Shown piece after piece: positions 2,560 through 34,888 of a stretch of 64,000 nucleotides of DNA. The position numbers were made by a program, and so were the translations under genes. The stretch comes from Phyllobates terribilis. Lineage: Eukaryota. Location of the stretch: assembly GCF_046119375.1 (NCBI RefSeq), contig NW_027362765.1, positions 101,184,001 to 101,248,000 on the forward strand, given 5' to 3'. Below the pieces are notes generated by a model that saw nothing but the letters and a program-made list of their open reading frames with translations, was not told the origin of the DNA and ran no database searches. Each line of letters starts with the position of its first letter. Positions within the stretch are counted from its first letter, which is position 1.

Positions 2560-5503
2560 AAAAGTATTGGCTGGGTTAGATGCAGATAAAAATGATATTG
2601 AATTTGCAACCTGGTGGAGGTTAGTATAGATGGACTAATAGACCAAGTCCCACACACTGCTAGAAGCCCAATTATTTTTTCAGAGCTAGATGCAGAAAAA
2701 AATTATATTGAATTTGCAACCTGATGGAGGTCAGTATAGATGGACTAATAGAGAATGTCCCACACACTGCTAGAAGGCCAAATATTTTTTCAGAGCTAGA
2801 TGCAGATAAAAATTATTTTTAATTTGCAACCTGGTGGAGGTTAGTATAGATGGACTAATAGACCAAGTCCCACACACTGCTAGAAGCCCAAATATTTTTT
2901 CAGAGCTAGATGCAGATAAAAATTATTTTTAATTTGCAACCTGGTGGAGGTTAGTATAGATGGACTAATAGACCAAGTCCCACACACTGCTAGAAGCCCA
3001 AATATTTTTTCAGAGCTAGATGCAGATAAAAATTATTTTTAATTTGCAACCTGATGGAGGTCAGTATAGATGGACTAATAGAACAAGTCCCACACACTGC
3101 TAGAAGCCGAAATATTTTTTCAGAGCTAGATGCAGAAAAAAATGATATTGAATTTGCAACCTGATGGAGGTCAGTATAGATGGACTAATAGAACAAGTCC
3201 CACACACAGCTGGAAGCCCAAATATTTTTTCAGAGCTAGATGCAGATAAAAATTATTTTTAATTTGCAACCTGGTGGAGGTTAGTATAGATGGACTAATA
3301 GACCAAGTCCCACACACTGCTAGAAGCCGAAATATTTTTTCAGAGCTAGATGCAGATAAAAATTATTTTTAATTTGCAACCTGATGGAGGTCAGTATAGA
3401 TGAACTAATAGAACAAGTCCCACACACTGCTAGAAGCCGAAATATTTTTTCAGAGCTAGATGCAGAAAAAAATTATATTGAATTTGCAACCTGATGGAGG
3501 TCAGTATAGATGGACTAATAGAACAAGTCCCACACACTGCTAGAAGCCGAAATATTTTTTCAGAGCTAGATGCAGAAAAAAATTATATTGAATTTGCAAC
3601 CTGATGGAGGTCAGTATAGATGGACTAATAGAACAAGTCCCACACACAGCTAGAAGCCCAAATATTTTTTCAGAGCTAGATGCAGATAAAAATTATTTTT
3701 AATTTGCAACCTGGTGGAGGTTAGTATAGATGGACTAATAGAACAAGTCCCACACACTGCTAGAAGCCCAAATATTTTTTCAGAGCTAGATGCAGATAAA
3801 AATTATTTTTAATTTGCAACCTGGTGGAGGTTAGTATAGATGGCCTAATAGAACAAGTCCCACACACTGCTAGAAGCCGAAATATTTTTTCAGAGCTAGA
3901 TGCAGAAAAAAATTATATTGAATTTGCAACCTGATGGAGGTCAGTATAGATGGACTAATAGAACAAGTCCCACACACTGCTAGAAGCCGAAATATTTTTT
4001 CAGAGCTAGATGCAGAAAAAAATTATATTGAATTTGCAACCTGATGGAGGTCAGTATAGATGGACTAATAGAACAAGTCCCACACACAGCTAGAAGCCCA
4101 AATATTTTTTCAGAGCTAGATGCAGAAAAAAATGATATTGAATTTGCAACCTGATGGAGGTCAGTATAGATGGACTAGTAGAACAAGTCCCACACACTGC
4201 TAGAAGCCAAAATATTTTTTCAGAGCTCGATGCAGAAAAATATTATATTGAATTTGCAACCTGATGGAGGTCAGTATAGATGGACTAATAGAACAAGTCC
4301 CACACACTGCTAGAAGCCGAAATATTTTTTCAGAGCTAGATGCAGAAAAAAATGATATTGAATTTGCAACCTGATGGAGGTCAGTATAGATGGACTAATA
4401 GAACAAGTCCCACACACAGCTAGAAGCCCAAATATTTTTTCAGAGCTAGATGCAGATAAAAATTATTTTTAATTTGCAACCTGGTGGAGGTTAGTATAGA
4501 TGGGCTAATAGACCAAGTCCCACACACTGCTAGAAGCCGAAATATTTTTTCAGAGCTAGATGCAGATAAAAATTATTTTTAATTTGCAACCTGATGGAGG
4601 TCAGTATAGATGGACTAATAGAACAAGTCCCACACACTGCTAGAAGCCGAAATATTTTTTCAGAGCTAGATGCAGAAAAAAATTATATTGAATTTGCAAC
4701 CTGATGGAGGTCAGTATAGATGGACTAATAGAACAAGTCCCACACACTGCTAGAAGCCGAAATATTATTTCAGAGCTAGATGCAGAAAAAAATTATATTG
4801 AATTTGCAACCTGATGGAGGTCAGTATAGATGGACTAATAGAACAAGTCCCACACACAGCTAGAAGCCCAAATATTTTTTCAGAGCTAGATGCAGATAAA
4901 AATTATTTTTAATTTGCAACCTGGTGGAGGTTAGTATAGATGGACTAATAGAACAAGTCCCACACACTGCTAGAAGCCCAAATATTTTTTCAGAGCTAGA
5001 TGCAGATAAAAATTATTTTTAATTTGCAACCTGGTGGAGGTTAGTATAGATGGCCTAATAGAACAAGTCCCACACACTGCTAGAAGCCGAAATATTTTTT
5101 CAGAGCTAGATGCAGAAAAAAATTATATTGAATTTGCAACCTGATGGAGGTCAGTATAGATGGACTAATAGAACAAGTCCCACACACTGCTAGAAGCCGA
5201 AATATTTTTTCAGAGCTAGATGCAGAAAAAAATTATATTGAATTTGTAACCTGATGGAGGTCAGTATAGATGGACTAATAGAACAAGTCCCACACACAGC
5301 TAGAAGCCCAAATATTTTTTCAGAGCTAGATGCAGAAAAAAATGATATTGAATTTGCAACCTGATGGAGGTCAGTATAGATGGACTAGTAGAACAAGTCC
5401 CACACACTGCTAGAAGCCGAAATATTTTTTCAGAGCTCGATGCAGAAAAATATTATATTGAATTTGCAACCTGATGGAGGTCAGTATAGATGGACTAATA
5501 GAA
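2560..5503. repeat. 110-bp satellite-like array, ~27 units, inside the hAT element
   Basis: TGCAGA(T/A)AAA recurs exactly every 110 bp from 2581 to 5441 with no indels. Confidence 0.97.
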
Positions 5504-6395
5504 TGATGCTATGCCCAAAAGGTTTTACTTCACTAGGTGAAGTAAAAAAATTGGTATTCTATACACAGGTGGTGTAGCTTGCAACACAGATAGGCTACTC
5601 CACTGACTAACACACTCTGCAATAGGCTAAAAAGGATTTGCTTTACTAGATTTAGCCAAATGCTGTGAAAAAAACTTGCACAGCACTGGCACAGACCTGC
5701 CTGGCAAAAACTGATAGGAACTGATGTAACTTAGTCCTGAAAAGGACTGCATTTACAATTAGTCTTTACTCCCAACCTATCTATTTAAGAGCACAGACCT
5801 GCCTGATAAAAGTCGTAGGAAATGATGTAACCTAGTCCTTAAAAGGACTGCAATCACAACTCTTCCCTACTCCCAAGCTATCTGCAGATTTGTGCGAAAA
5901 TTGGCTTTAAATTAACAGCGGTGCCGTCTAACACGCAGCTGCAGCAGTGAGAAAATGGTGGCGACGGGGAAAATGGCTGGGTCTTATAGGGCAAGGACAT
6001 GTGACATACACTGCCAATGACACATGCCCTTGCTTGTGTGAAAAAAAGCACTTCGCTCCGTGTGTGCGCTGCTGATAGGCTGACAGATTGCACCTCCCCA
6101 CTGTAAATGCGGGAAAGAGAAAAAAAAATGGAGATCTTCATTATTTCTGCAGAGATCCATCCCCTGCCCCTCCCCCCACCCCGCTGTACACTCAAACTGC
6201 GTATTAACATTAATTTTCATCATTACTGAGAAAAAATCCAGTTATGATTTTGGTGCACGAACAGTTATCGAACATAACCTCAAACAGCCGAATTTTTTTC
6301 AAATCGTTCGTGTTCGCCGAACGGCTCGAACACCGCCCAAAACAGCTCGAATTTGAGATTGACGAACAGTTCGAGTCGAACACCGCTCATCTCTA

Positions 6396-7402
6396 GTGGT
6401 AAACTCAGTTTTGTTATCAGATCTATGTGGTAAGCTCAGTTTTGTTATCGGATCTATGTAGTAAGCTCAGCTGTTATTGGATCTATGTAATAAGCTCAGT
6501 TTCATTATCAGATCTATGTAGTAAGCTCTGTTTTGTTATCAGATTTATGCAGTAATCTCAGTTTTTCATCAGATCTATGTAGTAAACTCTGTTTTGTTAT
6601 CAGATTTATGTAGTAATCTCAGTTTTTCATCAGATCTATGTAGTATGCTCAGTTTTGTTATCGAATCTATGTGTAAGCACAGTTTTATCGGTTCTATGTA
6701 GTAAGCACAGTTTTGTTATTGGATTCATGTAGCAAGCTCAATTTTGTTATCGGATCTATGCGGTAATCTCAGTTCTGTTATCAGATCTTTATAATAAACT
6801 CAGTTTTGCTATCTGTTCTATGTAGTAAGCTTGATTCTGTTATTGGATCTATGTAGTAAGCACGGTTCTGTTATCGGATCTTTGTAGTAAGCACAGTTCT
6901 GTTATCGGATCTATGTAGTAAGCTTGATTCTGTTATTGGATCTATGTAGTAAGCACGGTTCTGTTATTGGATCTTTGTAGTAAGCACGGTTCTGTTATCA
7001 GATCTATGTAGTAAGCTTGATTCTGTTATTGGATCTATGTAGTAAGCACGGTTCTGTTATCGGATCTTTGTAGTAAGCACGGTTCTGTTATCGGATCTTT
7101 GTAGTAAGCACAGTTCTGTTATCAGATCTATGTAGTAAGCTTGATTCTGTTATTGGATCTATGTAGTAAGCACGGTTCTGTTATCGGATCTTTGTAGTAA
7201 GCACGGTTCTGTTATCGGATCTTTGTAGTAAGCACAGTTCTGTTATCGGATCTATGTAGTAAGCTTGATTCTGTTATTGGATCTATGTAGTAAGCACGGT
7301 TCTGTTATTGGATCTTTGTAGTAAGCAAGGTTCTGTTATCGGATCTTTGTAGTAAGCACAGTTCTGTTATCGGATCTATGTAGTAAGTGTGGTTCTGTTA
7401 TC
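6396..7402. repeat. 31-bp minisatellite (~32 units)
   Basis: Consensus GGATCTATGTAGTAAGCACGGTTCTGTTATC. The 3' half is organised in 3- and 4-unit blocks. It directly abuts the hAT terminus. Confidence 0.95.
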
Positions 7403-8779: not shown

Positions 8780-8833
8780 ATGATGCCAGGATGCCGGAGA
8801 ACGTTGGTGCTTCTGGCCTGCACGTTGTCTCAG
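8780..8833 (+). CDS. ccn5: CCN5/WISP2 coding exon 1 (signal peptide MMPGCRRTLVLLACTLSQ)
   Basis: ATG at 8780 has G at -3 and an upstream in-frame TAA at 8711. The peptide has a hydrophobic core and ends CAG|GTAAGA in phase 0, matching exon 2. It resembles the mammalian CCN5 leader ending LLCLLSK. Confidence 0.8.
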
Positions 8834-11266: not shown

Positions 11267-11483
11267 ATTTGCTCCCAGATATGCCGACTCCCATGTACCT
11301 GCCCCTGGATACCAGCCCAATGCCCTCCCAGCTCATCCCTAATTGTAGACGGCTGTGGGTGCTGCAAGATCTGTGCACGGCGCATTGGAGAACCTTGTGA
11401 CCAGATCAACCTGTGCGATCAGAGGCAGGAACTAATGTGCGATTATTCTACAAGCATCGACGGAAGAGGAGGAACCTGTAACT
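11267..11483 (+). CDS. ccn5: CCN5 exon 2, IGFBP domain
   Basis: tttcag acceptor and T|GTAAGA donor; 217 nt. Encodes ICSQICRLPCTCPWIPAQCPPSSSLIVDGCGCCKICARRIGEPCDQ, with the GCGCC motif and CCN5-type CTCPW / ARR.GEPCDQ. Confidence 0.95.
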
Positions 11484-12404: not shown

Positions 12405-13943
12405 CAGTTGTGCTCAAAAGTTTACATACCCCACCAGATTTTTTCCTTTCTTGGCCTTATTTCCGAGAATATGAATGAAAAACATCCAAATGACCCTGAT
12501 AAAAAGTTCACATACCCCAGTTCTTAATACCGTGTATTGCCCCCTCTAACATCAATGACAGCTTGAAGTCTTTTGTGGTAGTTGTGAATGAGGTTCTTTA
12601 TTTTCTCAGATGGTAAAGCAGCCCATTCTTCTTGGCAAAAAGCCTCCAGTTCCTGTAAATTCCTGGTCTGTCTAGCATGAACTGCGCGCTTGAGATCTCC
12701 CAAGAGTGGCTCAATGATATTGAGGTCAGGAGACTGAGATGGCCACTCCTGAACCTTCACTCTACTGTAGCCAATGACAGGTCGACTTGGCCTTGTGTTT
12801 TGGATCATTGTCAGGTTGGAACGTCGAGGTACGTCCCATGCGCAGCTTCTGGGCTGATGAGTGCAAATTTGCCTCCAGTAATTGCTGATAACGTGCTGCA
12901 TTCATCTTTCCTTCAACTTTTACCAAGTTTCCTGTGCCTTTCTAGCTCACACATTCCCAAAACATCAGCGATCCACCTTCATGCTTTACGGAAGGAATGG
13001 TGTTCCTTTCATCATAGGCCTTGTTGACCTCTCTCCAAATGTAATGTTTATGGTTGTGGCCAAAAAGTTAAATTTTGGTCTCATCACTCCAAATTACCTT
13101 GTTCCAGGAGTTTTGAGGCTTGTCTCTGTGCTGTTTGGCTTATTGAAGGCGAGATACTTTGTGGCATTTGCGCAGTAATGGCTTTCTTCTGGGGACTCGA
13201 CCATGCAGCCCATTTTTCTTCAAGTGCCTCCTTATTGTGCATCTTGAAACAGCCACACCGCTAGTTTTCAGAGAGTCCTGAATTTCAGCTGATGTTATTT
13301 GTGGGTTTTTCTTTGCATCCCGAACAATTTTCCTGGCAGTTGTGGCCGAAATTTTTGTTAGTCTACCTGACCTTCTTTTGGTTTTTACAGAGCCCCTGAT
13401 TTTCCATTTGTTAATCACAGTTTGAACGCAGCTGACTGGCATTATTAATTCCTTGGATTTTTTTTGTATCCCTTTCCTGTGTTATACAGTTCAACTACCT
13501 TTTCCCATAGATCCGTTGACAATTCTTTTGCTTTTCCCATGACTCACAATCCAGAAACGTCAGTGGCTGGATGAAAGATGCAAGAGTCTGTCTGGATCCC
13601 AGAAATTTACTCAGCTTTTATGCACACACACTGATTACGAGCAAACAGGTCACAGGTGAGGATATTACCTTTAGTAGCCATTCAAACCCATTTCTGTCAA
13701 ATTCTGTGCATGTTATCAGGCCAAAATCACCAGGGTATGTGAACTTTTGATCAGGGTCATTTGGATGTTTTTGGTTGTCATTAAGATTTAAAAAGAGAAA
13801 ACACAGTAGTTTGACAATAAATGGCTTCACCCAACCAATAACCATGAGTGGAGAAAAAGTTTTTTGTTATCACTCATATTGTCTGAAACAAGGCCAAGAA
13901 AGGAAAAATTCTGCTGGGGTATGTAAACTTTTGAGCACAACTG
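12405..13943 (-). mobile_element. Tc1/mariner transposon with IR/DR-type long inverted repeats
   Basis: TA target duplication (12403-04, 13944-45). Identical termini CAGTTGTGCTCAAAAGTTTACATACCCC. Inner direct repeats AAAAGTTCACATACCC at both ends. Length 1539 bp. Confidence 0.95.
12524..13540 (-). pseudogene. Tc1 (DD34E) transposase pseudogene
   Basis: ATG at 13540 (MGKAKELSTDL). HTH region RSGR..KISATTARKIVRDAKKNP, GRVPRRKPLL, and catalytic WPSQSPDLNIIE. Broken by frameshifts and stops. Confidence 0.92.
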
Positions 13944-14230
13944 TATATCTGCAGGTCAATAGTGTTTTGGGACATGACAGTTTTTCTTTAAGGCAATTAT
14001 GGGATGGTTTAGACTAGAGAAACTGGAAGACGTCTGGAGTGCCCACCTCTGTTTTCAGCTACATTATCACAAATTGCACCTTTCTGTATCAGTTGTCAAT
14101 TCAACGACATAATAATACTGGACAAGATCTACATTTTTTTTACAATATTTGTGTTGTGTTCTCCGAAGGATTGTGCATAACATTCACAATCTAATATCTG
14201 CTGATATTCACGACATTGACTCTCCCCCAG

Positions 14231-14479
14231 ATAACCAGGATGGCAGCTGCAACGTTGATGGGAAAGTCTATGAAGATGGAGAAACATTTCAGCCCAGCTG
14301 TAAAGTCCAGTGCACATGTGTGGATGGTGGAGTAACCTGTATCCCTCTGTGCAGTGAGGACATCAGGCTTCCGAGCCCAACATGCCCCTTTCCTATCAAA
14401 GTGGATGTCCCAGGGAAGTGCTGCCATGAGTGGATATGTAATGGACAACATCCCAAGCTCCTTAATGGTGTGGAACAAG
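14231..14479 (+). CDS. ccn5: CCN5 exon 3, von Willebrand factor type C domain
   Basis: cccag acceptor and G|GTAAGT donor; phase 1 to 1. Encodes [65 protein letters not shown]. Confidence 0.95.
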
Positions 14480-14546
14480 GTAAGTGAAAAATAGTTGTGA
14501 ATACATTGACTATTTGACCTGACTGATGACTAAAATGTAACCTTAA

Positions 14547-14920
14547 AAGGATCGTGGACATTTTTTTTCTTGTTTAAATGAATGTGTTTTGGGCTAAAAA
14601 TTATTTTTGTAATTGAATTTTGCACTGATTGCTGTTACATCTTCTTAGGTTGCACCGTCAATTGTTTTCTGCAGAATGGGGTAACTGAGAAACCATCAGC
14701 GAGCTCATTGTGACAGTCCAATGGAAGAGTTTCTAACTTTTCAATCTGTAGTTTTCTGGGCTCCTCTCAGCTGATATATGATTACCGACTACAAAGAGCT
14801 TGTAAAAGCAAAGCTGAGCAAAATTTTTAATTACGTTAAATTGCAAAGTTGATTTTTAGCACAAAAATACATGCATTTAAAGAAAAAGAAAAAGTTTCTC
14901 CCCAGAGGTGGACAACCCCT
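14547..14920. mobile_element. T2-type MITE (CCN5 intron 3)
   Basis: TTAA flanks. The right TIR is GTGGACAACCCCT; the left TIR is degenerate. Confidence 0.55.
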
Positions 14921-15364
14921 TTAAGGCTATGTTCTCAAGGGACGTATTTACTGCGGACCTCTCGCACCCTTGATCACTTGAGATCATATGACCATGTCCA
15001 TCCATGTCAGTACCGCCCCGTGGTTGTATGTTTGAAGTCACAGGGAGAACGGGACTGTTGTATTATATGCTGAGTGTAAATAATGACACATAATATCCTG
15101 GATTTTTAAGGGACGGTTCACAGGAAGTCACTTCAAAGGAAACATTTAAGGTCAATTTTAGTTTTAAATTAGTATCACTAAACTCACAGTTTTGCTTTTA
15201 CTAGTAAAGTGAACGTCATCGACAAATCTATGAAATAACCTGACAGGTATGACAAGACGCGACTGTAAACTGAGATCTTCAGATCATTATCACTTTCCAT
15301 CTGGTGCTGAAGGGAGAGGTCACCTTAATCATGTTATAATAGGTAATTATATTCCCCTTTGTAC

Positions 15365-15625
15365 AGGGTGGAGATTCGCAGCCATGGTGACATTATGAGT
15401 GCATAATGAGTACCATTGGGGTCCTGCGTTCAAGTCCACCCAAACATAATGCCTGTGGAATCTGGGTTTTTGTGAGTTTCCTCTGGGTACTCCGTTTCTT
15501 TCATCAATTCTGTTACAATAATTGGAATTCATATAGAACTGACCATAGTAGTTGTCTGTTAGTGGGAAATTAGATTGTTAACTCCTGGGGAGAGGGATTG
15601 ATGTAAGTGATAACAGTCTCTACTT
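15365..15625 (+). mobile_element. Degenerate tRNA-derived V-SINE
   Basis: B-box GTTCAAGTCC followed by the V-domain-like GAGTTTCCTCTGGGTACTCCGTTTC and a 3' GGGAAATTAGATTGT segment. Confidence 0.6.
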
Positions 15626-15784
15626 TTGATTAAATACCACTTTACCGCATCTACGGTCTTTGGAGCAGGTCATGAATCCTCCCAAATCCTCCTCTTTAGT
15701 CATATTAGCAGTATGAATGTATGTTCAGTCAAGTTACAGTGCTGTCATCTTATCTTGCTGAGTTCAGTTGTACAACAGGTAGCA

Positions 15785-16125
15785 AATCACCTTAAAGAAC
15801 AACCGGATATCAAAATGTTTTCAAAAAAGATTTTAAATATACTTTATTATAAATTTTAAAAGGCATTTAAAATACATTGAAGTCCCACAGTCACACCAAC
15901 TACGGTATTACCCGATCCTCGGTTTCGCCTATCGGCTTCTTCTGGGGCAAGCTTGCTCTTGAAGATGGTGACAGGCGAAACCTTGGGTTGGGCGATAGCT
16001 GGCATGCTGCATGGGATTTTAATGTATATGGCATTTGAAATTTGGAATTGTATAAGTATAATTAAACACCCTTTGATACTTTTCTGGCTGTGCTGGCCTA
16101 TGTCTGGTTGTTCTTTAAGGTGATT
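15785..16125. mobile_element. Fold-back (head-to-head) Penelope-like pseudo-LTR pair with hammerhead-like motifs
   Basis: A ~340-bp imperfect palindrome centred on GCAAGCTTGC. Each arm, read outward, has a (C/T)NGAAGA..GCC/GGT-loop-GGCGAAAC core followed by an A(A/T)TAAA signal. Confidence 0.55.
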
Positions 16126-16559
16126 CATTACTTATGGTAGAACTGGATTTACATAGAAAAAGACAAGAGGTTCCAGCTTTTGGCCTGTGTCTCTTGCACC
16201 TTATTTTTTTATAAGGACTTTTAATCTAAAAAAGATGGACAGATCTCCAATAGTTTACCAAAAGCTGGAAACTCCTGTCTTTTTCTTTGAATATTGCCGC
16301 GTCTGGTCAGAACATTGTGTCCTGTATACTGGACCTATTCTTTCAGTGGTGAGCTGGCATTTTTTCAATTTTTTCTGTTTGTTACAACTGGATTTAGCAA
16401 GATAAGAGAATAGTACTGTTACTGGTCAGAACACACACCGATACTGTAAGTATAATGAAAGAGGAGGATTCGGGAGAAGTCCTGATCTCCTCAGAGGGCA
16501 ATAGATACAGTAAAGTGATATTTAATCTGATTTTTATGTATAAAGGTTTATATTGGACT

Positions 16560-17090
16560 GCTTTTCAGAATCACACAGGTGATATTAAAGAGTGAGGCAC
16601 TGAAAATGATGTAATTATATAATGGGTACACGTAGATGTTTGTGAGTAATTTATACAACATGATTTTATAATATAAAATACCCATGAAAGTATATACGAT
16701 AATCACAAGACAGATCAAGGACAAACCAAATGGTACTAATTCAACCGTATTAATAAAGGGTGCCGAGAGCTCAATAATAATAAATAGTAAAGCACCTTTA
16801 CATATATTATCCACTAATTAATTGAGTAACAATGCAAGAGCTTGTTATTAAATGGTGGTGAGGATATCTAACAAAGTGACTGTGCATAGAAGGTGCAACT
16901 GTGCATAATGAATAAAGAGCTCATGGGACCCTAACAATCATTGTCCAAAGTTGGAGCGGTATATCAAAGCATACTTGGAGTAGAAGAACCAAAGGTAGTA
17001 TGACAGAAGTGCTTACCGCCAAGATGATGATGCCCCACACACACGTTTCCCGACGCGCGTTTCGCCACTGCGGGCTTTGATGAGGGATCC
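16560..17090 (-). mobile_element. Probable Penelope-like pseudo-LTR remnant
   Basis: The - strand begins with a hammerhead-like TCCC...AGCC CGCAGT GGC GAAAC GCGC GTC GGGA, followed by AT-rich sequence. Confidence 0.4.
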
Positions 17091-17257
17091 CTGTTTGTTA
17101 ATTTTACAAAATAAAGTTGTTGGATCTGCTATTATTTGCTGTTGTGCAATCTATCTATAGGTTGTTAGATTACAGAGAGTGCCTGATTGCTATGTAATAT
17201 TTTTAGTCTCTGTACCTTGTTGCAGTATATGTTGGATATACATTTTCTTGTTGCCAG

Positions 17258-17427
17258 GGATGGTGGAGTCTAACTGCCCTGAGTGGAGCACAGAATGGGG
17301 ATCTTGTTCTGCTGACTGTGGCATTGGGATCTCTTTAAGAGTGACAAACCAGAATCTATTCTGCAGACTGGAAAGCCAGAGCCGCCTGTGTATAGTGAGA
17401 CCCTGTGGAGACCTCTCAGTTGGCACA
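17258..17427 (+). CDS. ccn5: CCN5 exon 4, thrombospondin type-1 domain
   Basis: ttgccag acceptor. Encodes [44 protein letters not shown]. Ends with a consensus phase-0 donor ACA|GTAAGT. Confidence 0.93.
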
Positions 17428-18622
17428 GTAAGTGTTAATGACCCTGATCGTGGCCATGTGCCATATCTCCACCCAAACTATGTGATGCAAAATGTTTCAC
17501 ACATGGTCTCAAGATGAAAACTGCAAATAGTTAGCTCTGTCTCAGTTCTAACCCACACCCCAATGACCATAGCAATTTATTAAACATAGGCTAACCCTAT
17601 ATTACCCCTGGTGCCACCAAACCAGCTGTGAACCCTTGAGGCATAGACTCCAGAAGGTCAATGAAGATGTCCTGTGGATATTAGCAGCAGACCCTATAAG
17701 TCCTGTAAGTTGTCTGGTGCACCCTCCATAGATAGGAATTGTTACTCCAGCGCATCCCAAAAGTGAGCGATTGGATTTAGATCTGTGGGTTTAGAAACAA
17801 GTTATCTCCTTGAACTCTTTGTTAAGTTACTCAAACCATCCTTGAGTAGTTTTTTGCGATACGAAAGGTGCAATACACTGTTGTAAGAGGCACTGCCATT
17901 AAAGAATTCTGCTGTCATGAAGGGGAGTACTTGGCTTTGTACTTTGGTCCATTGTTTATTTAGGTGGTACTTGTCACATCCACATGATCAAGGTTTTGCT
18001 TCCATACACTTGTATGGAGTGAGGCCACGCCCACTGGACAGGCTCTGGCCGGGAGTATGTATAACTCATACCTAACCTTCGGTCCCGGCTCAGAATCCGG
18101 CAAATCCCCGCAGCACACAGTGCATGCGCTGGGGGAATTCATAAGTCTCCAGTCACACAGAGTCACTGCAGACTTATCAATCTGGACCGGACAACAACTT
18201 AACCTAATGGTGAATATATACAAAGAGAGAGAGATACATGCTGTACATACCGTACATGTAATTAACCGATGTAGGGAGTCTGGCCCACAAAGGTCCTCAC
18301 ACTAGCACAATGTACATACTACACAACACCCTCATTATTTATAGATGGTATGACTGACCCTTACATTCTCCTTATCCTGCGCAGTGGGCGTCCTACACTG
18401 TGCAGCTGTCAGGTCACTTCATACTGTGAAGGAACATGTCACTTCATCCCGTCACTTGCAGATTATAGCTGGATTATTCGTATATCCATTGCTCCTATGA
18501 AAAGGGACAGGTGTCTGTAAGACTGTGGAGAACTTGTCCTTTCATTACATGAATATTCTCCATGGGGGTTTCACTGTTTTCATCGTGTACTTGACGTGTA
18601 CTAACACATCTTCTTCTTTCAG

Positions 18623-18844
18623 GCAGGAGCACCTTGTGTCCCCGTCCTGGAGGCTTCTCATCTGGTCAGGTTGGAGTTCCCTGGTTGTCTCAGTGTCCAC
18701 AGCTTCCTGCTCAGGTTTTGTGGCTCCTGCGGGATGAGGAAATGTGTCCCTCATCAGACATCAACAGAGATGGTGGAGTTTCAGTGTACAGAAGGACGTA
18801 GGAGGAGATTGATGATGTTCATCCTCTCATGTGTCTGCTACTAG
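18623..18844 (+). CDS. ccn5: CCN5 exon 5, C-terminal cystine-knot (CT) domain
   Basis: Pyrimidine-rich acceptor ttcttctttcag, phase 0. The open frame AGAPCVPVLEASHLVRLEFPGCLSVHSFLLRFCGSCGMRKCVPHQTSTEMVEFQCTEGRRRRLMMFILSCVCY-TAG aligns with the CCN2 CT module. The spliced CDS is 54+217+249+170+222 = 912 nt = 303 aa + stop. Confidence 0.88.
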   Translation, partial: AGAPCVPVLEASHLVRLEFPGCLSVHSFLLRFCGSCGMRKCVPHQTSTEMVEFQCTEGRRRRLMMFILSCVCY

Positions 18845-19319
18845 TAGAGGAGACGACCCCAGGAGCAACATATTGGAGGCCCAAATGTCCAAATCTTGCC
18901 TATTATGTGATTTGTCGAGACCCTGGACTTACAGAAGCACAATATGTCATGATATTAGTCAGATTTGTTTCTGCACAGATCCCACATAAATACGATGTGA
19001 CCCTACGGAGCCATATTTCTCATCTGTAGGACAATGGAGGCTGCAATACTCATTTCAGCATTTTGGCCTTCATTTCCTTATACGACATCACTCTGCCAAA
19101 ATGACTGCAAGAACAGACTTGATTGTAGATGATAACCCTGGACACACATGGTTTTGCATAGGAATAGTAGACATAAAACTGTCAGAGATTTATAATCAAG
19201 ACTATTTATAAAGCTATTATTTTGGATGAATTATTGTCTGGAAAAGTGGGGGTAGACTACAAATCTACACACTGGGAAAGCGTTAGTGAAAAAAGTCCCA
19301 TGTTGTTTCAATACCTTAT

Positions 19320-20047
19320 GGGGATTGTCCACTTGAATAAAATTATATTTTAATGTTAATTTATACAACTTAATAATATACTTGTATTAACAAAGGAGCC
19401 TCTATCTATAGATATCAGTACCGGTCAAGAGCAGCTCTACTCACAGTTTGTGCTGGACAAGAGAGCTTATTGTTTCCAATACTGTGTGTGTGAAAGGGGC
19501 TGGTTGACTGATTAATTTCAATAGGTAAACCAGACCCCTTCTCTGTCTATTTATTATTATGTTTTCTTATATAGCACCATAATTTATTGCAGTGCCTTAC
19601 ACATATTATTTATCCCTGTCCCCATTGGTCACAATACAAATTTCCTATCAATATATCTGGGAGGAAACCCACACAAACATAAGGAGAACATACAAACTCC
19701 TTGCAGATGTTGCCCTTGTTAGGATGTGAACCCAGGACTCCAGAGCCTCAAAGCAACAGTCCTAACCACTGAGCCACCGTGCTGCTCCTGTGAATTTGTC
19801 AAAACAGAAAAGGGGGGCTGGCTTATTGAATTGAGCCAGTCAACCAGCCCCCTTCACAAAAACACTGGTCCCATGACAGCACAGAAAAATCTTCCTCATG
19901 GCAAACAGAAGCCGGAGGTAGAACTTCCAGGACCAGTACTGATATGTGCAGATAGGGCAATTTTTTTAATACAAGTAAACTGGTAAGTTGTATATATTTA
20001 TATTTTACTCACATCTAACGATATATTTGTTAACAAGTGGACAACTC
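19320..20047. mobile_element. T2-type MITE containing a nested V-SINE
   Basis: TIR GGGGATTGTCCACTTG / CAAGTGGACAACTCT followed by TTAA. Internal inverted repeats flank the SINE. Confidence 0.65.
19550..19786 (-). mobile_element. tRNA-derived V-SINE
   Basis: The - strand reads GCAGCACGGTGGCTCAGTGGTTAG (A box), GGTTCACATCC (B box), GTGGGTTTCCTCCCA (V domain) and a (TAA)n-like tail. Confidence 0.8.
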
Positions 20048-24868: not shown

Positions 24869-25439
24869 TAGGTAGAAAGGGTCAAGAATCATTTCCTTTT
24901 CAAGGTCCAAACAATCCTCATTACACATTGTCAATTACCTTTTTTGTTTGTTTCTTTATTTTCTAATTTTTATCCCCTTTGAATTTAGGGATATGGGGAT
25001 TTAATATGCAGGATGCAGTTAGAAATTATCTGCCGAAAGCCTGAGGCTGCACTACTGACAGCTTCTAATGACAACAGGTCTTGTCCTCTCCAGTCAGGTG
25101 CAGGGATGTCATGAGTAATCTCTACTAACCTTTCTTCCAAAATAAGGGCTAATTCAGACTTCATTTTTTCGTGTACAGGTTCTATCAGCTTTTTTCATGG
25201 ATGGAACCAGTGCCGGACCCAGTTTTTTGTGGGCCCTGAGCGAAAGAGTCTCCGTGGGTCCCATTAACACATACACGATTCCTGATGCACAGATACGGCA
25301 GAGAAATATAGATATAGTACAGTGCCAAAGATTTGACTTACTTCTTACATTACTTGAGTGATATCTATTGTAAATAGCTCAGAAACCGGAGAATCCTCGC
25401 AGCGCACAGTGCAGACCGGACAATATAGTTCGCCATACA

Positions 25440-27260
25440 GTATTATGGGCACCACTTAATCCTCCATACAGAATTATGGGCCCCATGTATTGCTCCATGC
25501 AGAATAATGGACTCCATATAATGCTCCATACAGAATAATGGACCCCATATAATGCTCCATACAGGATACTGGCCCCCATAAAATGCTCCATGCAGAATAC
25601 TGGCCCCCATATAATGCTCCATACAGAATACTGGCCCCCATATAACGCTCCATACAGAATACTGGCCCCCTTGTAATGCTCCATACAGAATACTGGCCCC
25701 CATATAATGCTTCATACAGAATACTGGCCCCCATATAATGCTCCATACAGGATACTGGCCCCCATATAATGCATCATACAGAAAACTGGCCCCCATATAA
25801 TGCTCCATCAGAATACTGGCCCCCATATAATGCTCCATGCAGGCTGTGCCCCCATATAATGCCCCAAGCAGGCTGGGGCCGCATATAATGCCCCATGCTA
25901 GCTGGGCCTCCATATAATGCTGCATGCAGGCTGGGCCCCCATATAATGTCCCATGCAGGCTGTGCCCCCATATAATGCCCAATGCTGGCTGGGCCACCAT
26001 ATAATGCCGCATGGAGGCTGGGCCCCCATATAATGCTCTATGCAGGCTGGGCCCCCATATTATGCCCCACGCCGGCTGGGCACCCATATAATGCCCATGC
26101 TGGCTGGGTCCCCATATAATGCCCCATGCAGGCTGGGCCCCCATATAATGCCCCATGCAGGCTGGGCCCCCATATAATGCGCAATGCTGGCTGGGCCACC
26201 ATATAATGCCGCATGCAGGCTGGGCCCCCATATAATCATCCAAAAAAGAGAGAGAGAGATGTAATAGAAATTATGCTGATGTATAAAAGACATCACTCTC
26301 AATTAAATAATGGCCAAAGATATAGCTATTATTGCAAAATACTGTATCTTTATTATTCAAAGTACAACATGTGATATATAACAGTAAAAAACATACAGGA
26401 GTGACTGGGATGAGAGACCGGATAGGGGGTACGTTCGAAAATACCCCAAAGAGGGAGAAGAAAACCTTAACCCAACTGCAGATATATCCCCATATTATGT
26501 ACCCAGATGTTGACGAAGCCACTCTGGTGAAACGCGCGTCGAGGCGCGCTATTCATTCCCCTCTGCAGACTCTCCATACCTGGTCATCACTATGTCACAA
26601 GGTAATGTGTGGCTATTTTGATTACTATAAGCAGACCACTAAAGTTACGTTGATCTGCTTGCTGAGCTGCATGTCTAACTTTAGATCCACAGCCTGGGTG
26701 TCCTCCTAACAAGTCGGACACAGACCACATTGCCTGACTATACACAACATCTGGGTACATAATATGGGGATATATCTGCAGTTGGGTTAAGGTTTTCTTC
26801 TCCCTCTTTGGGGTATTTTCGAACGTACCCCCTGTCCGGTCTCTCATCCCAGTCACTCCTGTATGTTTTTTACTGTTATATATCACATGTTGTACTTTGT
26901 ATAATAAAGATACAGTATTTTGCAATAATAGCTATATCTTTGGCCATTATTTAATTGAGAGTGATGTCTTTTATACATCAGCATAATTTCTATTACATCT
27001 CTCTCTCTCTTTTTTGGATGTTTAGACTTTGATTGCGAGCTCTTTTTATAGGTTTATATGGGCCCCCATATAATGCCGCATGCAGGCTGGGCCCCCATAT
27101 AATGCCCCATGCTTCCTGGGCCCCCATATAATGCCGCATGCAGGCTGGGCCCCCATATAATGCCCCATGCAGGCTGGGCCCCCATATAATGCCCATGCTG
27201 GCTGGGCCCCCATGTAATGCCGCATGCAGGCTGGGTCCCCATATAATACCCCATGCCTTC
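25440..27260. repeat. 31-bp/29-bp minisatellite (GGCCCCCATATAATGC core), interrupted at 26237-27058
   Basis: 31-bp units (..TCCATACAGAATACT) switch to 29-bp units (..CCCATGCAGGCT) near 25830. The array resumes after 27058. Confidence 0.92.
26237..27058 (+). mobile_element. Penelope-like element end: pseudo-LTR with hammerhead-like motif plus inverted copy of its 3' part
   Basis: Two 276-bp inverted arms (26237-26512, 26745-27020) with 2 mismatches seen. The spacer begins with TGACGA AGCC ACTCT GGT GAAAC GCGC GTC GAGG. AATAAAG lies in the arm. Confidence 0.65.
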
Positions 27261-28513
27261 ATACATAAAAAAAAATTAAAAAAATCAAATACTCACCTCA
27301 CCTGCTGCTTCTGCTCTCATCGCTGCCGCTGGTCCGGACTCCTCAGCCGCGTCACCATCTTCCCGCTCTGGGCTGTGACGTCTCAGAAGAGAGCGCGGTG
27401 GAAAGACGTGATTGCGCCCTCTGATCTGAGACGTCACAGTGCAGCAACCATGAAAGATACAGGACCTGCTGCGGAGGCACGGGGAGAGGTAAGCATTGTG
27501 CCGGGGCCCTGAGCAAGCGGGGGGGGCGGGCGCTGGCACCGCTCTCCTCCGCTCACAGGTCCCATAGTGCGCCATGGTGCCCGATGGCGACTGGATCCCC
27601 CCCACCTGTTCAGGGCCACAGCACTTGCCCGGGTGCTGACGCCGGGCCTGGATGGAACCATACCTATTACAATCTATGGGGCTTTTTCACGTATCCACTT
27701 TTGCGAACTGAGCAGTCAGCACAAAATCACGGCTCAATCTCACCTCGGATCAGTTCCGCAAATGCAAGTCTTTGGGTCTGTGAAAAACTCAGACAGCATT
27801 CGGATGCTGTTGTGTGCTGTCCATTTTTCATGGACTGTTTGATAGGAGAAGCTTGAGAAACCTCCATCACATTTTTTTGTTTTTCATACAAAAAAAATGA
27901 TGAAAATCTGATGGTAAAATCTGACATATTGACCAAACTGATAAAAATTAGATTCAAAACACTAATGAAAATCGGACCATTTTTTGAGATGAGAAAAATT
28001 ACTGTATAACTGAGCCCTAAGGCCACATTCTCATGTTGAGTATTTGGTGGGTTTTTTACCTCAGTATTCGTAAGCCAAAACCAGGAGTGGGTAAAAAATA
28101 CAGAAGTGGTGACATGTTTCTATTATACTTTTCCTCTGATTGTTCCTCACCTGGTTTTGGCTTACACATACTGAGGTAAAATACTCACCAAATGCTCAAC
28201 GTGTGCACGTGGCTAAGAAGAGTCGCTGAGGAAGTAATGCTTGACCCAACGTAGACCTGAGGTCATGTTAGGACACGACTATGACAGGTGTGATGTAGGT
28301 AGCTCATGTTATATAGCTGTGAGCAGTGGGCAGCACCGAGACAGCCAGAGAGAGTCACTGTGTTTAGTGGAGGGAGGGGCAGTTCTCTGCTGTGAGATGT
28401 CAGATCGCTGCACTCCAGCAGAAGCACTGTGCTCTTCATGCATGCTGACAGCTGAAGGTCTCCATCTGCAGGCCCATGCCTGCTTCATCTAGAGCTCCCC
28501 TCCACACTCCATC

Positions 28514-29566
28514 ATGGAAGAGGATTTCTTTGAGTCGCCCATAACAGCCGGAATCCTTAATGTCAGCTCAGAATGCAACGTCAACAAGACTTTCACCTTT
28601 CGCTACTTATCTTCCGTTTACCTTATCGTCTTCATTGTAGGATCATTAGGCAATGGTTTGGGATTGTGGAATCTGTGCATGAACTGGAAGAAATGGACGT
28701 CACTGAACGTATTTGTGTTGAACCTTGGCATTGCTGACCTTCTCTATGTTGGAACGTTGCCATTTTTTGTGTCCTATTACCTTAGCGAAGGTGTTTGGAT
28801 GTTTGGTTATGGATTCTGCCGCCTCGCACGCATCATTTTCCATATGAACATGTATGCAAGTATCACCTTCCTCACCTGCATCAGCGTCCAACGCTACCTG
28901 GGAATAGTACATCCAATGAAAATGATGGGTCGTTTCCAGAACTTACGTCCTTCATTGTGCATCAGCATTATCATGTGGATATTGGTCGTTCTTCAGATCT
29001 TGCCAAACCTCCACTATACCAATGCCATAAAAAACGACACATACTGCCACGACTCGACAATCAATGAGCACCTGGAATCCTATGCGCCCTACACGCTGAG
29101 CATCACAATCACAGGTTTCTTAATTCCATTTATCATAATTTTAACTTGTTACACCCGGATCCTCACAGTTCTTACAAAAAACAAAAATGTGGACCCAGAC
29201 CTGAAGAGCAGAAGCATCAAACAAGTTTTTATCATCCTGACCCTGTTTGCTATCTGCTTCTTTCCATACTATACATTTCGAAACCTCAATTTGATTTCCA
29301 GAGTTTGGCAGCTCCAGGGAACCTGCACCGAAAGTCTAAAGAACGTTTATATATCCTATCAGGTGACCAGAGGACTGGCAGCCATGAACAGCGCCATTAA
29401 CCCTTTACTTTATTTAGTGACCAATGAAAACTTTGTTTCAAAATTTAGAAAGATCCAGAGGAGAGCCTGGTATGCCCTTGTCTATGTGGCCAGAAACCAT
29501 TCTCTCCCAGATATCCAGGCTATGTCTGTGAGTGGAAAGGAAGAAGAGATGTCTGAAGTAATGTGA
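28514..29566 (+). CDS. P2Y1-like purinergic-type GPCR (350 aa, single coding exon)
   Basis: Seven hydrophobic helices with motifs GN (TM1), LGIADLLY, CRLARIIFHMNMYASITFLTCISVQRYLGIVHP, CHDST (ECL2), FFPYYTFRN and YQVTRGLAAMNSAINPLLY. N-terminal and ECL3 cysteines could form the P2Y-type second disulfide. N-glycosylation sites NVS, NKT, NDT. A candidate AATAAA is at 30044. Confidence 0.93.
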   Translation: MEEDFFESPITAGILNVSSECNVNKTFTFRYLSSVYLIVFIVGSLGNGLGLWNLCMNWKKWTSLNVFVLNLGIADLLYVGTLPFFVSYYLSEGVWMFGYGFCRLARIIFHMNMYASITFLTCISVQRYLGIVHPMKMMGRFQNLRPSLCISIIMWILVVLQILPNLHYTNAIKNDTYCHDSTINEHLESYAPYTLSITITGFLIPFIIILTCYTRILTVLTKNKNVDPDLKSRSIKQVFIILTLFAICFFPYYTFRNLNLISRVWQLQGTCTESLKNVYISYQVTRGLAAMNSAINPLLYLVTNENFVSKFRKIQRRAWYALVYVARNHSLPDIQAMSVSGKEEEMSEVM

Positions 29567-34382: not shown

Positions 34383-34888
34383 ACCAAATTACACTTTGCA
34401 CTGATGAGGGGCCGTGCCCCAAAACACAGTGTCTGAAAATTGAGATTCTAGTTTTTATCCTAAGTCATGTGACAAGGCTTGTTAGAGAGTCGATATTGAC
34501 TTTTAGGATTGCTACTTCCTATAGAGTTATAATCCTCTTCCTCTCTGATGAGACAATTTGCATATTTCCCAGTGGAGCATTGTGGCTTAAAAGTCTCCTC
34601 ACCTTGGCATGCTTGATATGTCACTCTCCGCAAGGAGGAACGTTACCCCTTGGATCCCGGTCAGACGCCTCTCACCCAGCCAAACCAGATCTCACACTTT
34701 GCACTGATGAGGGGCAGTACCCTGAAACGCAGTGTCTGTAAATTGAGATTCTGGTTCTGGCTTTTTATCCTAAGTCATGTGTCAAGGCTCATTAGAGAGC
34801 CGATATTGACTTTTAGGATTGCTACTTCCTATAGGTGGCACTAGAGTTCTAGTCCTCTTCCTCTCTGAAGAGACAATTTGCATATTTA
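34383..34888 (+). mobile_element. Hammerhead-containing retrozyme / satellite-2-like repeat, 1.6 units of ~303 bp
   Basis: A ~190-bp direct repeat (34383-34568, 34684-34888). Each copy starts with a hammerhead motif, with CTGATGA at 34401 and 34704. Confidence 0.75.
34699..34741 (+). ncRNA. Type I hammerhead ribozyme (predicted cleavage after GUC at 34736)
   Basis: TTGCA-CTGATGA-GGGG(CAGTA)CCCT-GAAAC(GCAGT)GTC-TGTAA: intact core, 4-bp stem II, minimal stem III, and stem I TTGCA/TGTAA with one G-U pair. Confidence 0.8.

What the first reader, a model, noticed from the sequence alone, without database searches (positions are those of the whole stretch)
18623..18844. This CCN5 keeps a cystine-knot exon that mammalian CCN5 lacks
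Seen: exon 4 ends in a consensus phase-0 donor (ACA|GTAAGT). 1.2 kb downstream, a good acceptor opens a 73-codon frame with CCN-type CT motifs (GC.S...F...FCG.C, PHQTST..VEFQC..G, MMFI..C.C). The ORF track misses it. Established: mammalian CCN5/WISP2 is defined by absence of the CT module, which is linked to its anti-proliferative, CCN2-antagonist behaviour; four-module Ccn5 is, as far as I recall, described in teleost fish. Inference: this amphibian protein is a four-domain CCN5, placing CT loss later on the lineage to mammals, and it may not behave as a natural dominant-negative.
Basis: partly seen in the sequence, partly recalled or inferred. Interest (0 to 1): 0.75.

Follow-up and report, generated by a model that had tools for sequence, protein, structure and literature searches.

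The report
Frog CCN5 keeps a shortened cystine-knot
This frog's CCN5 (WISP2) gene has a real, spliced fifth exon encoding a trimmed cystine-knot module that all amphibians keep under selection but amniotes have lost, so the textbook "three-module CCN5" holds for amniotes only.

Summary
Exon 4 ends at 17427 (ACA|GTAAGT, phase 0). Assembled transcript contigs from 4 runs in 3 studies join it exactly to 18623.

The five exons give a 303-aa protein identical to the RefSeq model "CCN family member 5-like" of Phyllobates terribilis, so the exon is already annotated.

A tree of the first three modules places the gene in the CCN5 clade, and neighbouring genes are conserved.

Exon 5 encodes a genuine but reduced C-terminal cystine-knot (CT) module:
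- It scores 24.1 bits against Pfam Cys_knot (cut-off 24).
- The AlphaFold2 model has pLDDT 94 and best matches sclerostin, VWF CTCK and Norrin.
- It has 8 of the 10 CT cysteines. One of the adjacent CC pair (CCN2 C292 by alignment), C329 and the whole tail after the knot are missing.

The same short form occurs in 26 amphibian species of all three orders. It is under purifying selection: omega 0.21, and neutrality is rejected at p about 1e-21.

Coelacanth, ray-finned fish and sharks have the full CT. Amniote CCN5 has none.

Turtle and gharial still splice to a 7-codon fifth exon whose +1 frame holds a CT relic.

The literature says CCN5 lacks the CT, and one paper says so explicitly for Xenopus. 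How the module changes protein function was not tested.

The parts
8780..8833 (+). CCN5 exon 1: start codon and signal peptide (MMPGCRRTLVLLACTLSQ), phase-0 donor gtaaga
   Evidence: Sequence read. Spliced CDS of 912 nt. RNA contigs carry up to 73 nt 5' of exon 2. The whole protein is identical to a RefSeq model.
11267..11483 (+). CCN5 exon 2: IGFBP-like module
   Evidence: Pfam IGFBP E 5.1e-09. The loose end of the RNA contigs before exon 3 equals the last 30 nt of this exon.
14231..14479 (+). CCN5 exon 3: VWC module
   Evidence: Pfam VWC E 1.6e-09. Joint 14479^17258 seen in 4 runs.
17258..17427 (+). CCN5 exon 4: TSP1 module, ends in phase 0 at ACA|GTAAGT
   Evidence: Pfam TSP1_CCN E 2.1e-18. 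Joint 17427^18623 seen in 4 runs.
17428..18622 (+). Intron 4 (1195 nt, GT..AG)
   Evidence: Skipped in the RNA contigs of all 4 runs; depth is zero except over a short repeat near 18000-18040.
18623..18844 (+). CCN5 exon 5, coding part: 73 codons plus TAG. It encodes the short cystine-knot (CT) module. Its cysteines are protein residues 235, 252, 263, 266, 271, 285, 300 and 302.
18845..19500 (+). 3' UTR. AATAAA lies at 19336-19341. One run's contig ends at 19388; the other three run past 19500.
28514..29566 (+). Neighbouring single-exon rhodopsin-type GPCR gene (350 aa), a synteny marker downstream of CCN5
   Evidence: Pfam 7tm_1 E 9.2e-50. Bufo has a 7tm_1 gene 10 kb downstream of CCN5, and its flank matches window 28330-28578. 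Gharial has 7tm_1 plus Ion_trans_2 downstream.

Best explanation
The window carries the CCN5 (WISP2) orthologue of a poison frog; the protein is identical to the Phyllobates terribilis RefSeq model. The gene has five coding exons, one per protein part: signal peptide, IGFBP, VWC, TSP1 and CT.

Shown here:
- Exon 5 (18623-18844) is a constitutively spliced coding exon.
- Its 73 residues fold, by prediction, as a CTCK/DAN-type cystine knot.
- It descends from the CT module that fish CCN5 still has in full.

Inferred:
- The eight retained cysteines correspond to CCN2 C256-C293, C284-C323 and C287-C325 (the knot) and C273-C307 (the finger tips).
- The module has lost one cysteine of the adjacent CC pair (C292 by alignment), its modelled partner C329, and the whole wrist, helix and tail after the C-x-C motif.
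- The mature protein therefore has an even 36 cysteines and no orphan thiol.
- Because C292 is the residue proposed to stabilise CT dimers, the amphibian module most likely works as a compact, non-covalently associating or monomeric knot. It would add a binding surface next to the TSP1 module rather than acting as a disulfide-linked dimeriser.

This short form arose no later than the common ancestor of living amphibians and has been kept by purifying selection. The tetrapod ancestor still had a coding exon 5. Sauropsids disabled it by a frame change that stops translation after seven codons. Mammals end the protein inside exon 4.
For: - **Splicing:** identical 3-exon joints appear in one contig in each of 4 runs from 3 studies.
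- **Gene model:** the 912-nt CDS gives 303 aa, 100% identical to XP_073538728.1.
- **Domains:** IGFBP, VWC, TSP1_CCN and Cys_knot all hit in Pfam.
- **Orthology:** the CCN5 clade has support 95/97, amphibians 96/84, and the window is sister to Dendrobates at 99/89. A CT-only tree puts the amphibian CT (100/99) inside the CCN5-CT clade (93/89), apart from CCN2 and CCN3.
- **Conservation:** the 8 cysteines, G34, P43 and F53 are invariant across 39 CT sequences. The same CC-to-one-C change with a one-residue deletion, and the same truncation after C-x-C, occur in frogs, salamanders and caecilians.
- **Gene structure:** the phase-0 fifth exon is the same in 7 frogs.
- **Selection:** exon 5 omega is 0.213 against 0.217 for exons 2-4. 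Omega=1 is rejected with LRT 91.2, p 1.3e-21. Unsaturated pairwise dN/dS values are 0.17-0.36.
- **Fold:** AlphaFold2 gives pLDDT 94.1, all-beta. The best structural matches are sclerostin (Z 7.7, rmsd 1.9 A over 68 of 73 residues), VWF CTCK (Z 7.0), Norrin, NBL1 and PRDC.
- **Disulfide map:** the CCN2 CT map and the C292-C329 pair come from PMC10326224.
- **Amniote state:**
Against: - Pfam passes its cut-off by only 0.1 bit. SMART missed the module in Xenopus (PMC6610741), and precomputed Pfam lists no PF00007 for any amphibian CCN5.
- The runs are labelled 'RNA?' by guess. They are assembled contigs, so they give no expression level or isoform ratio, and rare CT-less isoforms would be dropped. 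Hyla sarda has a predicted 255-aa isoform without the module.
- Which cysteine of the CC pair was lost is ambiguous, because the alignment has a one-residue gap beside it.
- Disulfide pairing is inferred from a review of AlphaFold models and partial mass spectrometry of CCN2. It was not measured, and I could not read model coordinates.
- No solved CCN CT structure exists by sequence search.
- Monomer versus dimer, and any biological activity, are untested.
Confidence: 0.9

Rival explanations
1. Exon 5 is a transcribed but decaying leftover of the CT exon, on its way to the loss seen in amniotes, with no function of its own.
For: Two of the ten CT cysteines and the tail are gone. Pfam barely detects the module. 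Exon 5 is the least conserved part of the protein between distant amphibians: 38-62% identity against 51-68% for exons 1-4.
Against: Omega is 0.21, equal to the rest of the gene, and neutrality is rejected at p 1e-21. All 8 cysteines, the frame and the stop position are kept in 26 species of three orders. A truly disabled copy looks quite different: the turtle and gharial relic has a frame change, an internal stop and lost cysteines.
Confidence: 0.03
2. The gene is not CCN5 but another four-module CCN paralogue (CCN2- or CCN3-like) that amniotes lost, so nothing is learned about CCN5.
For: Shark and paddlefish relatives are named 'CCN family member 2-like' or '3-like' in their records.
Against: In the domain 1-3 tree, amniote CCN5 (99/96) is sister to amphibian CCN5 within a clade that mirrors the species tree and excludes CCN2, CCN3 and CCN4. 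ADA lies head-to-head upstream in Xenopus and gharial, as reported for human, mouse and zebrafish (PMC3133677). Sauropsid CCN5 carries the relic of the same exon.
Confidence: 0.02
3. The module is a full-function, fish-type fourth CCN domain, so amphibian CCN5 behaves like any four-module CCN.
For: The knot motifs and finger-tip cysteines are intact, and the predicted fold is confident. The module is orthologous to the fish CCN5 CT.
Against: It lacks the CC doublet, C329 and the whole 10- to 30-residue tail that every full CT in the alignment has, including the coelacanth's. The basic KGKKC-type start seen in CCN2 and CCN3 is absent (AGAPC). The missing cysteine is the one proposed to stabilise dimers (PMC10326224).
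Confidence: 0.05

Closest known systems
Teleost, coelacanth and shark CCN5 (for example zebrafish wisp2, Fernando et al. 2010, PMC3133677)
   Same: It is the orthologous gene with the same five-exon, four-module layout. The CT exon is orthologous.
   Different: Fish CT has 10 cysteines (C..C..CxGxC..CC..C..CxC...C) and a tail of 4 to 30 residues after the last cysteine. The amphibian CT has 8 cysteines, a one-residue deletion beside the former CC, and stops 0-1 residue after C-x-C (11 residues without a cysteine in Gastrophryne).
Mammalian and sauropsid CCN5/WISP2
   Same: It is the orthologue. The IGFBP, VWC and TSP1 modules are 51-60% identical to the frog's, and the neighbouring genes are the same.
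   Different: Amniote proteins are 240-255 aa with no CT. Sauropsids splice to a 7-codon exon 5 (RGRGxRL-stop) followed by a frame-shifted relic. The one mammal checked (Oryx) ends translation inside exon 4.
CT (CTCK) module of CCN1-3, Pfam PF00007 / SMART CT
   Same: It has the same knot motifs and predicted fold and is homologous by profile.
   Different: It has no C292-C329-equivalent pair, no wrist or C-terminal helix, and no basic N-terminal stretch.
Sclerostin, the DAN family, Norrin and VWF CTCK (solved cystine-knot structures)
   Same: These are the best structural matches to the model: Z 6.2-7.7, rmsd 1.9-4.0 A over 66-71 of 73 residues.
   Different: Sequence identity is only 19-26% and these are different protein families. 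The match shows the fold, not membership or shared partners.

Membership tests
CCN5 / WISP2 orthologue group | Signal peptide followed by IGFBP, VWC and TSP1_CCN modules, one exon each | tested here: met
   Pfam hits. Exon structure and splice phases.
CCN5 / WISP2 orthologue group | Groups with CCN5 of other vertebrates rather than with CCN1-4 or CCN6 | tested here: met
   CCN5 clade 95/97, amphibians sister to amniote CCN5. No CCN1 or CCN6 sequence with a source name was in the tree, only unnamed outgroups.
CCN5 / WISP2 orthologue group | Conserved neighbours (ADA upstream, KCNK15 side downstream) | tested here: inconclusive
   The window itself holds no ADA match; only 8.7 kb lies upstream of exon 1. 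The downstream 7tm_1 gene is shared with Bufo and gharial. ADA is upstream in Xenopus and gharial, and Ion_trans_2 is downstream in gharial.
CCN5 / WISP2 orthologue group | Absence of the CT module (the textbook mammalian definition) | tested here: not met
   Exon 5 encodes a CT-type knot. This feature defines amniote CCN5, not the orthologue group; fish CCN5 also has a CT (PMC3133677).
CTCK / CT cystine-knot module (PF00007) | Profile match at the curated threshold | tested here: met
   24.1 bits against a cut-off of 24, E 4.6e-05. 36 of 39 CT pieces match at E<=0.01. This is a marginal pass.
CTCK / CT cystine-knot module (PF00007) | Ring motifs C-x-G-x-C and C-x-C plus the threading pair | tested here: met
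   FCGSC and SCVC are present. C5, C22, C33, C36, C41, C55, C70 and C72 of the exon are invariant in 39 sequences.
CTCK / CT cystine-knot module (PF00007) | Cystine-knot growth-factor-like fold | tested here: met
   Predicted model only: pLDDT 94.1. Top matches are sclerostin, VWF CTCK, Norrin, NBL1 and PRDC at Z 6.2-7.7.
CCN-type CT (as in CCN1-4, CCN6 and fish CCN5) | Ten conserved cysteines, including the CC doublet and a last cysteine after C-x-C | tested here: not met
   Eight cysteines. One of the CC pair and the last cysteine are absent in all amphibians.
CCN-type CT (as in CCN1-4, CCN6 and fish CCN5) | Actual disulfide connectivity and dimerisation | not testable with these tools
   Model coordinates are not readable here and no solved CCN CT was found. 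Pairing is taken from PMC10326224.

The most novel reading that the evidence does not exclude
CCN5 shed its cystine knot stepwise and repeatedly. Amphibians fixed a minimal 8-cysteine knot without the dimer cysteine more than 250 million years ago. Sauropsids disabled the exon by a frame change while still splicing to it. Mammals dropped the exon altogether, and lungfish may have lost it on their own.

If so, amphibian CCN5 is a natural 'half-way' protein. Its short knot would change how the TSP1 effector module signals, for example making it CCN2-like rather than CCN2-antagonistic. Xenopus would then be a ready system to test what the CT module does in the CCN family.
Probability: 0.3. Interest if true: 0.65.

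Novelty: new variant of a known kind. Interest (0 to 1): 0.5.

Why it matters
CCN5 is singled out in the CCN literature as the member without the C-terminal knot. Its anti-fibrotic, CCN2-opposing behaviour is attributed to that absence, and grafting the CCN2 CT onto CCN5 is reported to reverse its effect (PMC4579636).

A comparative paper states that all vertebrate CCN5s lack the CT and lists the 312-aa Xenopus tropicalis protein without one (PMC6610741).

The data here show three things:
- The absence is an amniote trait.
- Amphibians keep a selected, trimmed knot that domain tools overlook.
- Sauropsid genes still show how the module was disabled.

This gives a natural minimal CT for structure-function work in Xenopus, a tractable model. 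It is also a caution against reading "no SMART/Pfam domain" as "no domain".

Tried and rejected
- **Length limit of the word search.** It cannot reach full-length relatives from single exons. A first alignment (A1) weighted towards teleosts returned only fish. An alignment of one paddlefish scaffold plus the window's exon pieces (A2) then recovered the amphibians.
- **Solved structures.** A sequence search of the PDB with the CT profile found nothing at E<=0.01.
- **Missing loci.** The look-up of encoding contigs had no record for Anomaloglossus, Pelobates or Protopterus isoform X2. So there was no caecilian or salamander DNA for codon tests, and no lungfish locus.
- **Weak first test of the turtle relic.** hmmsearch on stop-to-stop ORF pieces of the turtle locus gave only E 0.14-0.28. 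Sliding windows with X at stops, and shuffle tests, were needed.
- **Gharial and Oryx.** The gharial relic is not the top HMM window of its locus (9.7 against 9.9 bits). No relic above background was found downstream of Oryx CCN5 (7.3 bits).
- **ADA.** ADA exons from Xenopus and gharial found no match in the window.
- **Rejected readings:** a retrocopy in DNA as the source of the joined contigs (the introns have no depth); capture of a CT exon from CCN2 or CCN3; and use of the second AG at 18625-18626, which would shift the frame and is not the joint seen.
- **Earlier scan notes.** The two notes on this window (a retrozyme at 34383-34888) do not bear on this finding.

Full report
**1. What is in the sequence**

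On the + strand lie five exons with canonical splice sites:
- 8780-8833: ATG and signal peptide, donor gtaaga.
- 11267-11483.
- 14231-14479.
- 17258-17427: ends ACA|gtaagt in phase 0.
- 18623-18844: acceptor tcttctttcag|G, then 73 codons and TAG.

Joined, they give 912 nt and 303 residues.

Pfam calls one module per exon:

| Exon | Pfam family | E-value |
|---|---|---|
| 2 | IGFBP | 5.1e-09 |
| 3 | VWC | 1.6e-09 |
| 4 | TSP1_CCN | 2.1e-18 |
| 5 | Cys_knot | 4.6e-05 (24.1 bits, cut-off 24) |

**2. Is exon 5 used?**

The exon-5-plus-3'UTR stretch is held in full by nine runs. I laid four of them, from three studies, on 13900-19500. Each run contains one contig of 1440-1799 nt that joins 14231-14479, 17258-17427 and 18623 onward, with GT..AG introns removed.

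The unaligned letters of each contig just before position 14231 are the last 30 nt of exon 2. The introns have no depth apart from repeat fragments. That excludes genomic DNA or a retrocopy as the source.

The runs are contigs and their RNA label is a guess. They therefore show that the spliced form exists. They say nothing about its level, and they cannot exclude rarer isoforms.

The 3' UTR has AATAAA at 19336-19341. One contig ends at 19388 and three run past 19500.

**3. Which gene?**

The 303-aa protein is identical, residue for residue, to XP_073538728.1, "CCN family member 5-like", of Phyllobates terribilis. The window is therefore most likely from that species, and the exon is already in a public gene model.

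A maximum-likelihood tree of the IGFBP-VWC-TSP1 columns covered 56 proteins and 212 columns:
- It recovers a CCN5 clade with support 95/97.
- The branching order follows the species tree: sharks, ray-finned fish, coelacanth, lungfish, then amniotes (99/96) beside amphibians (96/84).
- The window is sister to Dendrobates (99/89).
- CCN2, CCN3 and a lamprey CCN4 fall outside.

Neighbouring genes agree:
- A single-exon 7tm_1 receptor lies about 10 kb downstream in the window (28514-29566) and in Bufo. The Bufo flank matches window 28330-28578.
- Gharial has ADA head-to-head upstream and a 7tm_1/Ion_trans_2 model downstream.
- Xenopus tropicalis has ADA upstream.
- ADA itself is not within the window.

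**4. What exon 5 encodes**

A search of 1.84 billion representatives with the 73 residues gave 74 hits at E<=1e-3. The best are only 49% identical. Every hit whose cluster name was looked up, or that aligned to the window protein, is a CCN-family protein matching over its C-terminal module.

Aligned with 38 other CT modules, eight cysteines plus G34, P43 and F53 are invariant.

Compared with the full CT of coelacanth, ray-finned fish, sharks, CCN2, CCN3 and CCN4, the amphibian module differs in three ways:
- It has one cysteine where the others have CC.
- It has a one-residue deletion next to that position.
- It stops right after the C-x-C motif, so the tenth cysteine and the whole tail are missing.

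A review of CCN structure (PMC10326224) gives the human CCN2 pattern:
- The knot is C256-C293, C284-C323 and C287-C325.
- C273-C307 links the finger tips; this pair is confirmed by mass spectrometry.
- C292-C329 is paired in the AlphaFold model. C292 is the residue suspected to stabilise dimers.

The two cysteines absent in amphibians are therefore one of the C292/C293 doublet (C292 by alignment; the gap makes this ambiguous) and C329. A whole disulfide has gone and the knot remains.

The cysteine census fits. Exons 2-5 hold 13, 10, 6 and 8 cysteines. That gives 36 in the mature protein if, as I infer, C20 is removed with the signal peptide.

**5. Fold**

AlphaFold2 with the 39-sequence alignment gives mean pLDDT 94.1 and pTM 0.73, with long beta hairpins.

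Foldseek's top hits are all cystine-knot proteins: sclerostin, VWF CTCK, PRDC, gremlin, NBL1 and Norrin. Their probability is 1.00, but the E-values are only 3e-3 to 5e-2 for this small domain.

VIA-align gives the following:
- Z 7.7, rmsd 1.9 A over 68 residues, for sclerostin in 6l6r.
- Z 7.0 for the VWF CK domain.
- Z 6.2-6.8 for Norrin, NBL1 and PRDC.

No CCN CT has been solved, judging by a sequence search of the PDB.

**6. Is it maintained?**

The same short module is present in 22 frog, 2 salamander and 2 caecilian species. The only length variant is an 11-residue, cysteine-free extension in Gastrophryne.

Seven frog loci share the phase-0 fifth exon.

A codon model (GY+F3X4, fixed species tree, 7 frogs) gives these estimates:

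| Region | omega | Test of omega=1 |
|---|---|---|
| Exon 5 | 0.213 | LRT 91.2, p 1.3e-21 |
| Exons 2-4 | 0.217 | LRT 238.6, p 7.8e-54 |

Pairwise Nei-Gojobori ratios among hyloid frogs, where dS is unsaturated, are 0.17-0.36.

A CT-only tree places the amphibian CT (100/99) inside the CCN5-CT clade (93/89). The exon was therefore inherited, not captured from a paralogue.

**7. When was the CT lost?**

All amniote CCN5 proteins retrieved are about 240-255 aa and lack the module. They include tuatara, turtles, gharial, lizards, snakes, birds, platypus, a marsupial and placentals. The longer bird entries among the amniote hits carry no Cys_knot hit in the precomputed Pfam list; two whose C-termini were read (emu, kiwi) end in unrelated sequence.

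Sauropsid proteins end in a shared seven-residue tail, R-[GAR]-[RK]-[GR]-x-[RQ]-[LF]. Some bird, turtle, lizard and tuatara entries end differently.

In painted turtle and gharial this tail is a separate fifth exon behind a ctctgtctttccag acceptor. The +1 frame of that exon reads a degraded CT. In the turtle it is ..VVCSP..GCSRNGCSTPNEAREELTDFSCKGG-stop-RIWNKIPAPCSCP.

Tests of the relic:
- The turtle relic is the best CT-profile window of its 30-kb locus in six frames: 13.4 bits against 7.0 for the next.
- It beats all 2000 composition-preserving shuffles against caecilian and salamander CTs. The z-scores are 9.1 and 6.9 for turtle, and 7.0 and 9.4 for gharial.
- It is weak by plain hmmsearch (E 0.14).
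- In gharial it is not the top window of the locus.

In Oryx the coding sequence ends inside exon 4 and no relic stands out.

The annotated lungfish CCN5 isoforms (263 and 261 aa) also lack the CT. This may be a separate loss or an incomplete gene model.

The tetrapod ancestor therefore still had a coding exon 5. Whether it was the full or the short form is open. The spacing in the turtle relic hints at the full CC form, but relics accumulate indels.

**8. Literature**

- Fernando et al. [quoted passage not shown]
- A 2019 comparative study lists Xenopus tropicalis CCN5 (NP_001011237) at 312 aa, with TSP1 at 190-234 and no CT by SMART. It states that all vertebrate CCN5s lack the CT, although its own table gives zebrafish CCN5 a CT at 265-334 (PMC6610741).
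- Reviews repeat that CCN5 lacks the module.
- I found no paper in the searchable library that describes an amphibian CCN5 CT. Subscription journals are not covered.

**9. Verdict**

Two corrections apply: the module is a trimmed, 8-cysteine knot rather than a full fourth domain, and the exon is already annotated.

What appears new:
- Recognising the overlooked tail as a conserved, selected, reduced CT common to all amphibians.
- The frame-shifted relic in sauropsids.

Function is inferred, not shown.

Noticed in passing
L007:19825-20040 (Chrysemys picta) and L008:19439-19665 (Gavialis gangeticus): Sauropsid CCN5 still has a fifth coding exon of 7 codons (RARRGRL / RGRGSRL, then stop). The +1 frame of the same exon holds a degraded cystine-knot relic with an internal stop and lost cysteines. 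The seven-residue tail is shared by many turtles, gharial, birds and squamates.
   Followed up: partly
L009:19068-19286 (Oryx dammah): In this mammal the CCN5 coding sequence ends inside exon 4 (...GPCPPARGHSPRGRAF, then stop), with no fifth exon and no detectable relic. This is a different end state from sauropsids.
   Followed up: partly
P0350 / P0320 (Protopterus annectens CCN5 isoforms X1 and X2, 263 and 261 aa): The annotated lungfish CCN5 lacks the CT although coelacanth and amphibians have it. This is either an independent loss or a missed exon in a very long intron. The locus could not be fetched.
   Followed up: partly
P0243 versus P0351 (Hyla sarda CCN5-like X2, 255 aa, and X1, 304 aa): A frog has a predicted alternative isoform that ends in an unrelated 26-residue tail without the CT. 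This hints at regulated CT-plus and CT-minus forms. No such form was seen in the window's contigs.
   Followed up: no
window 28514-29566 (+): An intact single-exon rhodopsin-type GPCR gene (350 aa, 7tm_1 E 9e-50) lies 10 kb downstream of CCN5. It is conserved in position in Bufo and gharial. Human has no GPCR between WISP2 and KCNK15, as far as I recall. Its identity was not determined.
   Followed up: partly
window 2577-5503 (also 1-235) and 6392-7402: A 110-bp satellite of 26.6 copies at 95% identity, with a related 2-copy array at the window start, and a 31-bp minisatellite of 33 copies. Both lie upstream of CCN5.
   Followed up: partly
window 12527-13442 (-), 44669-45966 (+), 62041-62820 (+), 518-1675 (-): Transposon remnants: a Tc1/mariner transposase in CCN5 intron 2 (HTH_Tnp_Tc3_2 and DDE_3), a piggyBac-like transposase (DDE_Tnp_1_7 and zf-Tnp_2), a gag/PNMA-like ORF, and a 386-aa ORF with no Pfam hit.
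   Followed up: partly
window 25379-27262 (-): Long ORFs made of a degenerate repeat (..YMGAQPAWGIIWGPSLHGALYGGPA..), probably a tandem repeat read as protein. Not examined.
   Followed up: no
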